DNA from: Mizuhopecten yessoensis
Taxonomy: Eukaryota
Reading direction: 5' to 3'
Length of the DNA: 64,000 nucleotides
Assembly: GCF_002113885.1 (NCBI RefSeq)
Contig: NW_018480078.1
Location: 1,856,607 to 1,920,606 of the forward strand
Shown in pieces: positions 4,951-52,417 of the stretch. The first letter of the stretch is position 1. Each line of letters begins with the position of its first letter. The notes beneath the pieces are model-generated. The model did no database searches. It worked only from the letters and a program-made list of their open reading frames with translations, and was not told where the DNA came from. The position numbers and the translations under genes were made by a program.

Positions 4951-5079
4951 ATATTTCACAATTTAGTTACTTGAAGGCAAATACCAATACCTGCAACATA
5001 CATAGGAGTAACCTTGGTTTTAGAAAAAATATCCCAACTCAATTTTCACGACTGTCTATTAATGTATAGACTTAAAAAA

Positions 5080-5622
5080 CTAATTTCAGATTATTTTCTG
5101 CCTGTTGCTAATTTCAAATTATTTTCTGCCTGGTTTTTTCTTTCTGCCTGTTTGCTAATTTCAGATTATTTTCTGCCTGGTTTTTTTCTTTTTGCCTGTT
5201 TGCTAATTTCAGATTATTTTCTGCCTGTTTGCTAATTTCAAGTTATTTTCTGCATGTTGCTAATTTCAGATCATTTTCTACCTGTTTGCTAATTTCAAGT
5301 TATTTTCTGCCTGTTGCTTATTTCAGATCATTTTCTGCCTGTTGCTTATTTCAGATCATTTTCTGCCTGTTGCTAATTTCAGGTTATTTTCTGCCTGTTG
5401 CTAATTTCAAATTATTTTTTGCCTGGTTTTTTTTTTTCTTTCTGTCTGTTTGCTAATTTCAGATTATTTTCTGCCTGTTGGCTGTTTCAGATTATTTTCT
5501 GCCTGTTGCTAATTGCAGGTTATTGTTTGCCTGTTTGCTAATTTCAAGTTATTTTCTGCCTGTTTGCTAATTTCAGGTTATTTTCTGCCTGTTGCTTGTT
5601 TCGGGTTATTTTCTGCCTGTTG
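5080..5622. repeat. 28-29-bp minisatellite (TTGCTAATTTCAGATTATTTTCTGCCTG)
   Basis: Directly visible; units start e.g. at 5229 and 5257; some units are interrupted by T-runs. Confidence 0.95.
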
Positions 5623-29960: not shown

Positions 29961-32939
29961 TTTTTTTATTTATTTTTTTGTCGGTTAAGAATTCGCAGTT
30001 TTCTATCAAGCGTTTCTATTGTCTGTAAGGATTTAATGCTTTCTTTGTTGACCTTTCTCTCTTGTCTTTGTTTTTTTAAGGATCTTTTTTATGTTTCGGT
30101 CCCATTGTCCACATGGTATTTTGAAAAGTTTCAATCGCTATAATATTCTTATGAAACAAAATAAAATTTTAAAACATCATTTAAATAAAGTTCAATTTCA
30201 AATTAAGCAATACCAGCATAGCTTCGTACACATTCACACGTGTGTGAATAAAAAGTAAAATGATAAACTAGTATATACTTGTTATACATATTTGTTTTTG
30301 TTAGAATATAGAAATACAAGGTGAATTGGTGCGCCAGAAAAGTGATCTAAAGTCATTTTGGAAATGAGACTTTTTAAAAAAAAGTTTTAGATTTAGTTGT
30401 ACAAAAGATGTTAATATCATCTAAAATTGAAGTATTTTGAAATATCCTTTGTCTAATACTCCATAAATAGAGAGCTTATTATGTTCAAGGTTTTCTCGTA
30501 CATAAATATGATGTACCGAACTTTTAAACATTGACTAACACCCCGCGTAGTAGTGGGAGTGGGTCTGAAATCAGACACGTGTGTCTTGCCGTACATCCGT
30601 GGGGGACCCGCACCTCTCAACCAAAAGTTTAAATCTGAGAGCAACGGGTACTAAAAACACCCAGCCAAGTACAGACTTTGTTTTCCGAACTTTCAATAAG
30701 ACAATCACCTATCCAACTTTGTTCAGCTATTTTAACTTATTTCTTAACGCGGATTAATTTTCCCATACAAAATGCTTATCCGTGCGTATTAGACAAGGGT
30801 AGTAAGTCTTTAGTAACGTAGAATGGGAACACATACAACCGGTATGATTTAGTAAACAAACTTATGTGAACTTGTAATGAACCTCGCCTGATCAAATTAA
30901 TATAATTGTTTTGTTATATAAAGGATAAGTCTCCAAATTCCAGACGTTACAAGTTTCAGATTAGGACCCAATGGTTATAGCCTAGTTTAATACACAGGAA
31001 TGCACACATTAATAGCCCCCAAGGGCAACCACCTGTCGACACAGCTTGTTCTACGTATAAACCAGTAAAATCTCTACTTTGTAGTACACAAGCAATCCCC
31101 AAGCAGAGCGTTCGTAATTAAAATATCTCTCGGGTTTATACATAAAACATAAGGTCGATCTAGTTGCACACCTTATTATCCGAGATATATTCTCAGGTGT
31201 ACTGTTTCAAGGTTAATCAAGACAATAGGTACACCTGGATCAATGGGTACCAATGCTGGTACCATTAACGATAAACATACTAGCAAACTCGCTATAAAGG
31301 GCCATCAATTTTATACAATGAAGTAACTTTCACTTTTCTTTGTTAAATTTTATTAAATAAGCAGATTTAATTTGCGCATTAATTTTTTTTTTTTTACCGT
31401 GAATAAATTTTTGATTTGTTTAAGGAAGGTATTATGCCCTTCTTCAGTTTAAAAATACACTTAAGTTTTGTCGTTTATAGTGATGGCAGCAAACACTTCA
31501 AATTATTGCAATCTTAACACAATTACAATTACTTAAACTTGGAGGAGATCTTACAGTTGTTGCAAAAAAAAATATGAATGTTAGTTATAACAAATTTCTA
31601 AATGACAAGTCTTCGCTCTCAATACATTTATCTACTCCCCACAATATATGTATTTCGAGATTTGAATCGTTTGATTTATAAAACGAAGCGCACTCTTCAA
31701 GCTGTAGTGGTTAAATGGAACAAAAACATTTAAAGTAAAACTAAAACCATTACTATTTATAGTACCAAGGTCAACTTCAGCAGTGACTTTATTACGAGGA
31801 AACATAAGATTTTCATTCATATATTCGTATATATTTACAAAAACCTAATTCCCGATAGATACATTAAAGGGCTCATTCTCCTCCAACTTGTTCTATTATT
31901 AATGGTTTTTATGGGATTGTAACTTGCACTAAATAACACGACTTCGAGTTGTAATGGCACTAATTTCATGTGGGAAGTTGAAGTATCTTGTGTGTAGTAT
32001 AAAATGCAGACATACAACGACATAAAATGTCGCAGTGCTATTTGCTAACATTTCCCATTTACTTTATTGCCATACAGAGTGACAGCAGGGAAGTGGATGT
32101 TGAGTGTATAGTCTGTACACTGTAAGATACGGAGCTTCACTACTGCGCCTTGATATTGATCTGGTCGGTGACAACTGCATTCGGTACATAATCTTCAATA
32201 AACAAAAACAATGACTATCATGTTGATTGCGTTTCGTTTGAAATCTTTGAACAGAATCGTCACGTCAGTATTAACCAGAAGTTTTAAATTAGTACAAACT
32301 CAACTGAAAGCCGACCAGGTAGTTGGGTACGAATCATCACTGTTAGAAAGGAAAAGAGCACATTTACTGTAATACACGGACTGTGTGTAGATATTTTGAG
32401 AAAGTAAACATATACAGAAAACTGTTCACAATTTCTCCCTTCCTCCTGAAGAGAATAATAAACAAAAATGCTCGAGACTACAATTTTCATTGTTAAAAAA
32501 GCATTTATTATATAATACATACCGTACCAGAACACAATATATGTCTACCTACCCACATATCGTTGTGGGGAAATATTTATACATGTAATAAACTAAACTT
32601 CGTTTAATTATTTTTTGTTTGTTTCCTATTATGTTCCTGGTGTACGTGTTTGTATATAAATCTAATCATTACCAGGTATTATCACGGTGTTAACTTTTAG
32701 GTTATATGGTCGTATAATGATGATACGGACAAGTGATATGTTGTCACAAGACCTGGACACTCGTTTACGTCACGTTTAGTTCAGGTTCAAAAGTATATCG
32801 AACGTTCTCAAAGAAGTGGTCCATAAACCTGAATTTTGCACTCTGTGCACGTAGAGTGTTTACTAGCATCCATCAATTAATACTCAAGGTAGTTCAGCAA
32901 ATATTTTTTCTTTTTCATTTTAAGTCTATGTTGCCCTAT

Positions 32940-39822: not shown

Positions 39823-40728
39823 NNNNNNNNNNNNNNNNNNNNNNNNNNNNNNNNNNNNNNNNNNNNNNNNNNNNNNNNNNNNNNNNNNNNNNNNNNNNNN
39901 NNNNNNNNNNNNNNNNNNNNNNNNNNNNNNNNNNNNNNNNNNNNNNNNNNNNNNNNNNNNNNNNNNNNNNNNNNNNNNNNNNNNNNNNNNNNNNNNNNNN
40001 NNNNNNNNNNNNNNNNNNNNNNNNNNNNNNNNNNNNNNNNNNNNNNNNNNNNNNNNNNNNNNNNNNNNNNNNNNNNNNNNNNNNNNNNNNNNNNNNNNNN
40101 NNNNNNNNNNNNNNNNNNNNNNNNNNNNNNNNNNNNNNNNNNNNNNNNNNNNNNNNNNNNNNNNNNNNNNNNNNNNNNNNNNNNNNNNNNNNNNNNNNNN
40201 NNNNNNNNNNNNNNNNNNNNNNNNNNNNNNNNNNNNNNNNNNNNNNNNNNNNNNNNNNNNNNNNNNNNNNNNNNNNNNNNNNNNNNNNNNNNNNNNNNNN
40301 NNNNNNNNNNNNNNNNNNNNNNNNNNNNNNNNNNNNNNNNNNNNNNNNNNNNNNNNNNNNNNNNNNNNNNNNNNNNNNNNNNNNNNNNNNNNNNNNNNNN
40401 NNNNNNNNNNNNNNNNNNNNNNNNNNNNNNNNNNNNNNNNNNNNNNNNNNNNNNNNNNNNNNNNNNNNNNNNNNNNNNNNNNNNNNNNNNNNNNNNNNNN
40501 NNNNNNNNNNNNNNNNNNNNNNNNNNNNNNNNNNNNNNNNNNNNNNNNNNNNNNNNNNNNNNNNNNNNNNNNNNNNNNNNNNNNNNNNNNNNNNNNNNNN
40601 NNNNNNNNNNNNNNNNNNNNNNNNNNNNNNNNNNNNNNNNNNNNNNNNNNNNNNNNNNNNNNNNNNNNNNNNNNNNNNNNNNNNNNNNNNNNNNNNNNNN
40701 NNNNNNNNNNNNNNNNNNNNNNNNNNNN
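39823..40728. other. assembly gap (906 N)
   Basis: Run of N. Confidence 1.
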
Positions 40729-40752
40729 TAAGGGCTCTTCAGGTTTATTCCT

Positions 40753-40792
40753 GAACCTGAAGAGCCCTGTGAAGGGTGAAAGCAGCTAGTTT
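40753..40792 (+). ncRNA. minimal type I hammerhead ribozyme motif (Penelope-like element terminal repeat type)
   Basis: GAAC-CTGAAGA-GCCCT-GTGA-AGGGT-GAAA-GCAGC-TA|GTTT: CUGANGA core, 5-bp stem II closed by a GNRA loop, GAAA, very short near-palindromic stem III, CUA cleavage triplet and 4-bp stem I. Confidence 0.7.
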
Positions 40793-40858
40793 TTTAGTCG
40801 GTCGTTAATTATATTTTTTCTATATTTACTTCCTTCACATGGACATTTAATCACTTTT

Positions 40859-40861
<3 letters not shown>

Positions 40862-40894
<33 letters not shown>
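40862..40894. repeat. (TA)n microsatellite
   Basis: Directly visible. Confidence 0.95.
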
Positions 40895-52085: not shown

Positions 52086-52417
52086 TGTAACAGGAGCGGG
52101 AAAAATTGCACGTTCGAACCCTGGAACCTCCGAACTCTAGACGGATGCTCTTACCAATTGAGCTACCTGGTCGCCAGCAATCGACCCAATCTAGTTCCGC
52201 TACATCCCTCCCTCCTTTAACAATCCCTTTGACCTGAAGACACACGAGACCATTTACCACTTTCCGTGTGCATATTTCATTGGGCGCCAAATGTAACAGG
52301 AGAAAGAGAAATGCACGGCCTGACTGTGATTCGAACCCGGGTCCTTCCGAACTCTAGAAGATATAACTAGTTTAGCTACCTGTTCGCCGGCGACCGACCC
52401 AGTCTATTTCCGCTACA
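52086..52417 (-). mobile_element. non-autonomous mini LTR retrotransposon (TRIM) with tRNA-derived LTRs (Ajax-like)
   Basis: Two direct repeats TGTAGC...GTTACA (52417-52292 and 52204-52086). PBS TGGCGCCCAA lies 2 nt after the 5' LTR; PPT AAAGGAGGGAGGGA abuts the 3' LTR; each LTR has A-box- and B-box-like motifs. Confidence 0.88.

What the first reader, a model, noticed from the sequence alone, without database searches (positions are those of the whole stretch)
40731..40792. Minimal hammerhead ribozyme with a built-in perfect antisense arm (head-to-head ribozyme pair)
Seen: 40753-40792 fits a type I hammerhead, with CUGAAGA, stem II GCCCU/AGGGU closed by a GUGA tetraloop, GAAA, stem III AGC-A-GCU, predicted cleavage after CUA at 40788, and stem I GAAC/GUUU. 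Eight nt upstream, 40731-40745 is a perfect 15-nt reverse complement of AACCTGAAGAGCCCT, i.e. the start of a second, divergently oriented copy running into the gap. Established: minimal hammerheads with tiny palindromic stem III occur in Penelope-like element terminal repeats, are reported to cleave as dimers, and such elements often carry inverted partial repeats. Inference: a read-through transcript would fold a 15-bp hairpin that sequesters the core (off state), while transcripts starting inside the spacer could cleave. The G10.1-U11.1 pair looks like CpG decay and may lower activity.
Basis: partly seen in the sequence, partly recalled or inferred. Interest (0 to 1): 0.75.

Follow-up and report, generated by a model that had tools for sequence, protein, structure and literature searches.

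The report
Hammerhead ribozyme in Penelope retroelement end
The motif is a genuine minimal hammerhead-ribozyme module at the 3' end of a young Penelope-like retrotransposon that landed in a (TA)n microsatellite, and its "antisense arm" is the usual inverted twin copy these elements leave on insertion: a known kind of element, not a new ribozyme switch.

Summary
Observation confirmed. 40754-40792 has every sequence feature of a type I minimal hammerhead, with the predicted cut at 40788|40789. 40731-40745 is a perfect 15-nt inverted repeat of 40754-40768.

It is not a one-off. The genome holds about 630 copies of the 33-nt motif, 286 of them exact. Full-length copies carry a 732-aa RT plus C-terminal GIY-YIG ORF with a CX4CxxC linker, so the family is a Neptune/Nematis-type Penelope-like element (PLE). 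The hammerhead lies about 110 nt after the stop codon, followed by a 3' module, an optional ~36-nt "tail" and (TA)n.

Sister PLE families (55-63% aa identity) carry a hammerhead at the same place. Helices I and II covary between families, and helix III is a short palindrome.

The Helitron rival fails because homology runs 35-75 nt past CTAG.

Head-to-head arrangement, a tail at one end only, (TA)n targeting and assembly gaps are all published PLE hallmarks. U11.1 is the family state (286 exact copies with T, 0 with C), not CpG decay.

Self-cleavage is untested. RNA-seq was too thin to show ends at the cut site.

New here: the 5' ends of truncated copies cluster at the first base of helix I and around G1.1.

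Another first-reader note in this genome (s1-512523) reports a similar motif elsewhere.

The parts
39823..40728 (.). Assembly gap (906 N) hiding the rest of the inverted arm and its outer (TA)n end.
   Evidence: Sequence left of the gap is unrelated and unique. PLE inverted repeats are a published cause of assembly breaks (PMC8557442). L062 has a gap at the same kind of junction.
40729..40750 (-). Inner end of the inverted, 5'-truncated copy. It is the antisense of GAAUAAAC + CUGAAGAGCCCU. 40729-40730 do not match the family.
   Evidence: Compared with complete pairs.
40751..40753 (.). Junction filler (CTG) between the two arms. It differs in every genomic pair.
40754..40792 (+). Minimal type I hammerhead: helix I 5' strand AAC, core CUGAAGA, helix II GCCCU-GUGA-AGGGU (G10.1.U11.1), GAAA, helix III AG-CAG-CU, A17, helix I 3' strand GUUU. 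The predicted scissile bond is 40788|40789.
   Evidence: Covariation with sister families.
40789..40825 (+). 3' module downstream of the cut site, ending at the internal TATAT where 'short-end' copies join (TA)n. This is the inferred first RT initiation site.
   Evidence: conserved in all copies, and short-end copies stop here.
40826..40861 (+). Optional ~36-nt PLE 'tail' extension. It is present on one arm only in 12 of 13 complete pairs with both ends readable.
   Evidence: Tail concept: PMC8557442 and PMC11167929.
40862..40894 (.). (TA)n microsatellite, the insertion target and 3' junction.
   Evidence: Nearly all family copies read, and the sister-family copies, run into (TA)n or TA-rich repeats.

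Best explanation
The window holds the inner part of a 5'-truncated, head-to-head (inverted-twin) insertion of a young Penelope-like retrotransposon into a (TA)n microsatellite. Each arm is the element's 3' terminal module: a 3-4-nt helix I strand, a minimal type I hammerhead, about 36 nt of 3' module, an optional ~36-nt tail, then (TA)n.

Shown:
- membership of a ~630-copy family
- linkage of the same module, in sense orientation ~110 nt after the stop codon, to an RT + CX4CxxC + GIY-YIG ORF
- hammerheads with covarying helices at the same place in sister PLE families
- variable junctions between the two arms
- the tail on one arm only
- (TA)n at the outer ends

Inferred from published PLE biochemistry (PMC11167929): the endonuclease cuts both strands of the target and both 3' ends prime reverse transcription at one of two internal RNA sites (short end or long end). 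Two convergent cDNAs then meet head to head. The inverted arm is therefore a by-product of integration.

The hammerhead most likely acts on sense transcripts of tandem or pLTR-containing copies. It would cut after A17, probably as an intermolecular double hammerhead through the short near-palindromic helix III and/or with help from the element's protein. That cut frees the RNA from upstream sequence.

In a transcript that spans both arms, the ribozyme would simply be locked in a long perfect hairpin.

The confidence given applies to the identity (PLE 3' module with a hammerhead motif and an inverted twin). That the ribozyme actually self-cleaves in vivo I put at about 0.55.
For: Family size and exactness.

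Homology past CTAG to (TA)n, with short and long ends.

Pfam RVT_1 (E 1e-8) plus GIY-YIG (E 4e-5) in the 732-aa ORFs of L062 and L063, and in the shorter 611-aa ORF of L061. Sense hammerhead 3' of the ORF and an inverted truncated copy 5' of it. CKTPRCATC linker. At least 11 loci encode the 732-aa stretch at 100% identity without stops.

Sister families B, C and D keep CUGANGA...GAAA...UA| while the helices change:
- helix I: AAAC/GUUU, GUCUC/GAGAC, UCCGC/GCGGA
- helix II: CCCU/AGGG, CGGG/CCCG, GCC/GGC, UCUC/GAGA
. There are 252 genomic hits to the B/C-type descriptor against 2 for the control.

On a CM-fitted alignment of families A, C and D, 93.7% of cells are paired against 33-50% when the partners are slid. 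Eight of 12 pairs show changes on both sides.

For B, C and D the dimer MFE is the classical double hammerhead through AGGCCU or AGUACU.

Twelve of 13 complete pairs have a long tail on one arm only.

Literature: min-HHRs in PLE repeats (PMC4209133); inverted truncated copies, tail, (TA)n bias and assembly problems (PMC8557442); cleavage and extension of both strands, with two RT start sites (PMC11167929).

Twenty-six of 63 copies truncated near the cut site start at G1.1 +/- 2 nt. This is compatible with cDNA run-off on cleaved RNA.
Against: - No experiment shows cleavage.
- The Rfam score is far below gathering.
- 10.1-11.1 is G.U here and A.A in families B and C, not the G-C that is typical of canonical and PLE min-hammerheads (PMC4209133).
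- For family A the predicted dimer MFE is not the double hammerhead.
- RNA-seq: 48 reads on both strands, with no pile-up of ends at the cut site.
- Published PLE min-HHRs cleave poorly in vitro, and Naiad PLEs thrive without them.
- The window copy has no ORF, and its left arm is hidden by the gap.
- The covariation rests on only 3-4 families, partly on a structure-fitted alignment.
Confidence: 0.88

Rival explanations
1. The hammerhead fold is conserved as a structural or protein-recognition element of the PLE 3' end, or as a passenger motif, and self-cleavage plays no part in this family's life cycle.
For: - 10.1-11.1 is non-canonical in families A, B and C.
- No read ends at the cut site.
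- PLE min-HHRs have low activity in vitro (PMC4209133).
- HHR mutants do not affect insertion in vitro, and no RNA-seq ends were found at the cut site in Anolis (PMC11167929).
- Most copies retain both sides of the cut site.
Against: The catalytic core, the UH cleavage dinucleotide and the palindromic helix III are kept across families whose helices have changed completely. That pattern is what selection for catalysis predicts. The 5' ends of truncated copies are enriched at G1.1.
Confidence: 0.2
2. One reading: the antisense arm is a built-in regulator. A 15-bp hairpin gives an off state in read-through transcripts and an on state in transcripts that start in the spacer.
For: RNAfold puts the arm and the core into a 17-bp hairpin of -33 kcal/mol. 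Head-to-head pairs are very common.
Against: Spacer length and sequence, and the end points of both arms, differ in every pair. Arms range from a few nucleotides to kilobases (L061-L063). The arrangement is the published by-product of PLE integration. Nothing in the spacer is conserved that could act as a promoter.
Confidence: 0.04
3. A Helitron 3' end: a GC-rich hairpin about 10 nt before a CTAG terminus, inserted 5' of a T.
For: The GCCCT-GTGA-AGGGT hairpin lies 8 nt before CTAG|T.
Against: In every copy the homology continues 35-75 nt past CTAG to (TA)n. The family encodes RT and GIY-YIG, not Rep/helicase. Inverted twins are common.
Confidence: 0.01
4. A foldback/MITE-type DNA transposon whose terminal inverted repeats resemble a hammerhead by chance.
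For: Many (-,+) inverted pairs with short loops.
Against: There is no fixed internal sequence or loop. One arm carries a tail and the other does not. The same module occurs singly, in tandem, and in sense orientation 3' of an RT ORF. The helices covary in sister families.
Confidence: 0.02

Closest known systems
Minimal hammerhead ribozymes of Penelope-like elements (Cervera & de la Pena 2014, PMC4209133; Lunse et al. 2017, known to me by title only)
   Same: - Type I topology, with the CUGANGA / GAAA / UH core.
- Tiny palindromic helix III that implies action as a dimer.
- Location in the PLE terminal repeat.
- Hundreds of copies per genome.
   Different: 10.1-11.1 is G.U here (A.A or A-U in sister families), not the highly conserved G-C preceded by a bulged base. 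Family A has a 1-nt interruption of the helix III palindrome (AGC-A-GCU). It scores below every Rfam hammerhead threshold.
Canonical EN+ PLEs of the Neptune/Nematis type (Arkhipova 2006, as cited in Craig et al. 2021, PMC8557442)
   Same: [quoted passage not shown]
- (TA)n insertion bias.
- Inverted 5'-truncated twin copies.
- A 30-40-bp tail at one end.
- A hammerhead near the 3' end.
   Different: No phylogeny was made here to assign the clade. This family also shows many 'mini' copies that consist of only the hammerhead plus the 3' module, with a discrete 5' end.
Poseidon PAc of Anolis (Frangieh et al. 2024, PMC11167929)
   Same: The hammerhead sits tens of nucleotides upstream of two alternative reverse-transcription start sites, and the spacing between those sites equals the tail. 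The biochemistry of extending both strands explains the inverted twins.
   Different: In PAc the hammerhead overlaps the ORF start and the start sites are AC-rich. Here the hammerhead follows the ORF and both ends merge into (TA)n, so microhomology priming is possible.
Animal non-LTR retrozymes (PMC7229834; bioRxiv 10.64898/2026.07.22.740005)
   Same: Non-autonomous, hammerhead-bearing derivatives of PLE terminal regions.
   Different: Retrozymes are head-to-tail tandem arrays that yield circular RNAs. The units here are mostly solitary or head to head, so one transcript cannot carry two sense ribozymes.

Membership tests
Hammerhead ribozyme, type I minimal (PLE type) | Catalytic core C3-U4-G5-A6-N7-G8-A9 and G12-A13-A14, in the order helix I - core - helix II - GAAA - helix III - H17 - helix I | tested here: met
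   40757-40763 CUGAAGA, 40778-40780 GAA, A15.1/U16.1, A17 at 40788.
Hammerhead ribozyme, type I minimal (PLE type) | Helices I and II maintained by compensatory changes among relatives | tested here: met
   Families A-D. Eight of 12 pairs change on both sides; 93.7% of cells are paired against 33-50% when slid. Caveat: few families, and the alignment was fitted to the structure.
Hammerhead ribozyme, type I minimal (PLE type) | G10.1-C11.1 closing pair, with a bulged base before 10.1 in PLE min-HHRs | tested here: not met
   G.U in family A (fixed: 286 exact copies with T, 0 with C). A.A in B and C, A-U in D.
Hammerhead ribozyme, type I minimal (PLE type) | Short palindromic helix III that allows a double-hammerhead dimer | tested here: inconclusive
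   AGGCCU (B, C) and AGUACU (D) are perfect palindromes, and their cofold MFE is the double hammerhead. Family A has AGCAGCU with a central A.A, and its MFE is a different dimer.
Hammerhead ribozyme, type I minimal (PLE type) | Match to a curated Rfam hammerhead model at the gathering score | tested here: not met
   No hit at gathering. HH9 scores 19.4 bits against 52. Minimal PLE forms may simply be poorly covered by these models.
Hammerhead ribozyme, type I minimal (PLE type) | Site-specific self-cleavage after H17 | not testable with these tools
   RNA-seq was too thin: 48 reads and no end pile-up. The enrichment of genomic 5' ends at G1.1 is only suggestive.
Penelope-like element, EN+ with C-terminal GIY-YIG | Single ORF with a PLE-type RT followed by a GIY-YIG endonuclease | tested here: met
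   L062 and L063, 732 aa: RVT_1 at 220-407 and GIY-YIG at 642-726. L061 has a shorter 611-aa ORF with both domains. This holds for the family. The window copy is a truncated non-coding end.
Penelope-like element, EN+ with C-terminal GIY-YIG | Inverted or tandem 5'-truncated copies (pLTRs) and a 30-40-bp tail at one end | tested here: met
   (12 of 13 pairs asymmetric).
Penelope-like element, EN+ with C-terminal GIY-YIG | CX2-5CxxC Zn-finger-like linker (Neptune/Nematis) and (TA)n targeting | tested here: met
   CKTPRCATC upstream of the GIY-YIG domain. (TA)n or TA-rich repeats flank nearly all copies read and the sister-family copies. Clade phylogeny was not done.
Helitron 3' terminus | The element ends at CTRR, about 10 nt after a hairpin, with flanks diverging right after it | tested here: not met
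   Homology continues past CTAG in all 69 copies inspected.
Non-LTR retrozyme | Head-to-tail tandem repeats, each with a sense hammerhead | tested here: not met
   The window copy is head to head. Only occasional tandems occur elsewhere (L039/L040).

The most novel reading that the evidence does not exclude
The genomic 'fossil record' of this family may preserve the 5' ends of its template RNAs.

(a) About a quarter of hammerhead-bearing copies begin exactly at the first nucleotide of helix I (AAAC|CUGAAGA).
(b) Copies truncated near the cut site begin preferentially at G1.1.

If (a) marks the transcription start of the terminal repeat and (b) marks run-off on self-cleaved RNA, this would be in vivo evidence that a PLE hammerhead cleaves and that the cleaved RNA is reverse-transcribed. 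Earlier work could not show either. It would also mean the ribozyme removes a ~37-nt capped leader.
Probability: 0.25. Interest if true: 0.55.

Novelty: new member of a known kind. Interest (0 to 1): 0.25.

Why it matters
As it stands, this is a clean example of an already described class: a hammerhead in a Penelope-like element end with an inverted twin. It is useful for annotation. It explains a gap-prone inverted repeat, a microsatellite-embedded repeat family of about 630 copies, and a probably active retrotransposon with at least 11 identical intact ORFs.

It corrects two tempting misreadings, the Helitron end and the designed antisense switch.

The family's youth and copy number make it a good system for two open questions about PLEs. 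Does the hammerhead cleave in vivo? Where do template RNAs start? The clustered 5' ends give concrete positions to test.

Tried and rejected
- Rfam at gathering gave nothing. The 'evalue' mode gave a weak HH9 hit among miRNA-like noise caused by the hairpin.
- MAFFT could not align the four families' hammerheads.
- A covariance model built from family A alone found D (E 0.01) and C (E 0.8) but never B. A second model from A, C and D also missed B. B was therefore compared by explicit parsing.
- The two extra window hits of model R1 are not hammerheads. 32822-32867 was read and lacks the core. 5070-5096 was not inspected; it is AT-rich (GC 0.15) and scores 13.8 bits, E 0.5.
- RNA-seq: one raw-read RNA run plus three contig runs. 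It showed low, two-stranded coverage and no ends at the cut site, so it is uninformative on cleavage and on the transcription start.
- The Helitron, MITE/foldback and CpG-decay readings were rejected.
- The gap was not filled and no consensus of the element was built.
- The organism was not identified. From memory, the assembly size (987.6 Mb, 82,659 contigs) resembles a published scallop assembly. This is unverified.

Full report
**1. The observation**

The repeat finder reports arms 40731-40745 and 40754-40768: 15 nt, 100% complementary, 8 nt apart.

Downstream lie CUGAAGA (40757-63), a 5-bp helix II with a GUGA loop (40764-77), GAAA (40778-81), the short helix III region, and U16.1-A17 (40787-88). 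Then comes GUUU, which pairs with the (G)AAC that precedes the core. The predicted scissile bond is 40788|40789.

The left arm starts 2 nt after a 906-N gap (39823-40728). Sequence left of the gap is unrelated.

A descriptor made of the core only is expected 1.8 times per 64-kb window. The case therefore rests on the helices and on comparative data.

Rfam gives nothing at gathering thresholds. Its only other hit is a 19.4-bit match to Hammerhead_HH9, whose gathering score is 52.

**2. It is a repeat family, and homology does not stop at CTAG**

The 33-nt motif occurs 630 times in the 988-Mb assembly with up to 3 mismatches, against 0 for the reversed control. Of these, 286 are exact.

Across 69 distinct copies, conservation continues beyond CTAG for about 36 nt to a TATAT. 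There a copy either merges directly into (TA)n (the 'short end') or continues for another ~36 nt before (TA)n (the 'long end'). The window copy has the long end (40826-40861) followed by (TA)n (40862-40894). This removes the Helitron reading.

**3. The family is a Penelope-like element**

Some (-)...(+) motif pairs lie 2.6-3.4 kb apart and enclose an ORF. [quoted passage not shown] L061 has a shorter 611-aa ORF with the same two domains. A CKTPRCATC motif precedes the endonuclease. This is the CX2-5CxxC linker of Neptune/Nematis-type PLEs (PMC8557442).

The sense hammerhead lies about 110 nt after the stop codon. It is followed by the 3' module, the tail and (TA)n. On the 5' side sits an inverted, 5'-truncated copy with a short end, then an assembly gap.

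At least 11 loci encode the 732-aa stretch at 100% identity without stops. The family is young and probably active.

Craig et al. 2021 describe each of these features as typical of PLEs:
- partial tandems and an inverted 5'-truncated copy at the 5' end
- a 30-40-bp tail, often at only one end
- trouble for short-read assemblies
- (TA)n insertion bias
- hammerheads near the 3' end

**4. Is the hammerhead real?**

Within the family the motif is nearly invariant, which says nothing about structure. Sister PLE families in the same genome are informative. Their ORFs are 55-63% identical to this one, and I fetched their 3' ends. Each has a hammerhead at the same place.

| Family | Helix I | Helix II | Helix III |
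|---|---|---|---|
| A (this one) | AAAC/GUUU | CCCU/AGGG | AGCAGCU |
| B | GUCUC/GAGAC | CGGG/CCCG | AGGCCU |
| C | UCCGC/GCGGA | GCC/GGC | AGGCCU |
| D | (decayed copy) | UCUC/GAGA | AGUACU |

In all of them CUGANGA, GAAA and UA| are kept. The B/C-type descriptor has 252 genomic hits against 2 for the control.

On a model-fitted alignment of A, C and D, 93.7% of cells are paired, against 33-50% when partners are slid. Eight of 12 pairs show changes on both sides. The caveats are that only a few families are compared and that the alignment was fitted to the structure.

ViennaRNA cofolding of B, C and D gives the classical double hammerhead as the dimer MFE, 7-11 kcal/mol better than two monomers. 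Family A does not, because its palindrome is interrupted by one A.

All this fits the PLE 'min-HHR' class of Cervera & de la Pena 2014, with one difference. Position 10.1-11.1 is G.U here, A.A in B and C, and A-U in D, rather than G-C. The U is not decay in this copy: 286 exact copies carry T and none carries C.

**5. What the antisense arm is**

Head-to-head pairs are abundant. In each pair the inner end points of the two arms and the filler between them differ, so each pair is an independent insertion product.

In 12 of 13 complete pairs, one arm has the long tail and the other the short end.

Frangieh et al. 2024 showed that a PLE protein cleaves and extends both target strands. They also showed that it starts reverse transcription at two internal sites whose spacing equals the tail. 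Convergent cDNAs from both strands explain the inverted twins. I infer that (TA)n, being self-complementary, makes such double priming easy.

A transcript across a complete pair folds into a perfect hairpin of about 100 bp (-157 kcal/mol, L005). In the window, the visible part gives a 17-bp hairpin (-33 kcal/mol). The core would indeed be sequestered in such a transcript. Nothing, however, indicates that this is a selected switch. The two ribozymes are also on opposite strands, so they cannot form a dimer in cis.

**6. Activity**

Activity is untested. One raw-read RNA run of the same species gave 48 reads over 586 nt, on both strands, with no accumulation of ends at the cut site. This neither supports nor excludes cleavage. 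The same negative result was reported for Anolis.

**7. An unexpected pattern**

The 5' ends of truncated copies are not random.

In a contig-ordered sample of 78 hammerhead-bearing copies, 19 end exactly 4 nt before C3, which is the first base of helix I. Twenty-six end within -3 to -5, and only one between -21 and -60.

Among 63 copies truncated between -10 and +8 of the cut site, 21 keep G1.1 as the first element base and 5 start at +2. Uniform spread would give 14 of 63 in that 4-nt window. There is a secondary cluster at +6/+7.

Chance extension in AT-rich flanks blurs the exact base, and RT pausing is an alternative explanation. I therefore regard this only as suggestive of run-off on self-cleaved RNA, and of a defined RNA start at the helix I boundary.

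**8. Verdict**

The regulatory-switch, dimer-pair and CpG-decay inferences are not supported. The object is a new member of a known kind, and interest is low to moderate.

Noticed in passing
G000 family copies (L031-L060, L077-L116): About a quarter of hammerhead-bearing copies (19 of 78) are 5'-truncated at one exact position, AAAC|CUGAAGA, the first base of helix I. They form discrete 'mini' units of hammerhead + 3' module (+ tail). This may mark a transcription start in the terminal repeat, or a preferred template-switch point.
   Followed up: partly
G000 copies truncated near the cut site (L096, L117-L176): The 5' ends cluster at G1.1 +/- 2 nt (26 of 63 between -10 and +8), with a second cluster at +6/+7. 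Several head-to-head pairs have both arms starting at or within 2-3 nt of G1.1 (for example L157 and L161). This could be a footprint of in vivo self-cleavage.
   Followed up: partly
L062 1921-2000 (minus strand); L067-L076: In all four PLE families an AAUAAA hexamer lies just 5' of helix I, and several TGACGTCA (CRE-like) palindromes lie within about 250 nt upstream. They may be poly(A)-signal and promoter elements of the terminal repeat.
   Followed up: no
L070 ~325-450; L073 ~305-400; L071 187-282: PLE ends are re-targeted by other PLEs. Family-A mini pairs sit inside the (TA)n that terminates family-C copies, and a family-D head-to-head pair lies just downstream of the tail of a family-B copy.
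   Followed up: no
G000, 11+ loci (e.g. C2300:1318032-1320227, C2314:271526-273721): At least 11 loci encode the 732-aa RT-GIY-YIG stretch at 100% identity without stops. The family looks recently or currently active.
   Followed up: partly
window 40729-40730: The two bases next to the gap (TA) do not match the family's antisense arm, where AC is expected. This may be an assembly-edge artefact or a real difference.
   Followed up: no
window 52086-52417: Another first-reader note on this window (s1-528043) calls this a 332-bp mini LTR retrotransposon with tRNA-like LTRs. I did not examine it.
   Followed up: no
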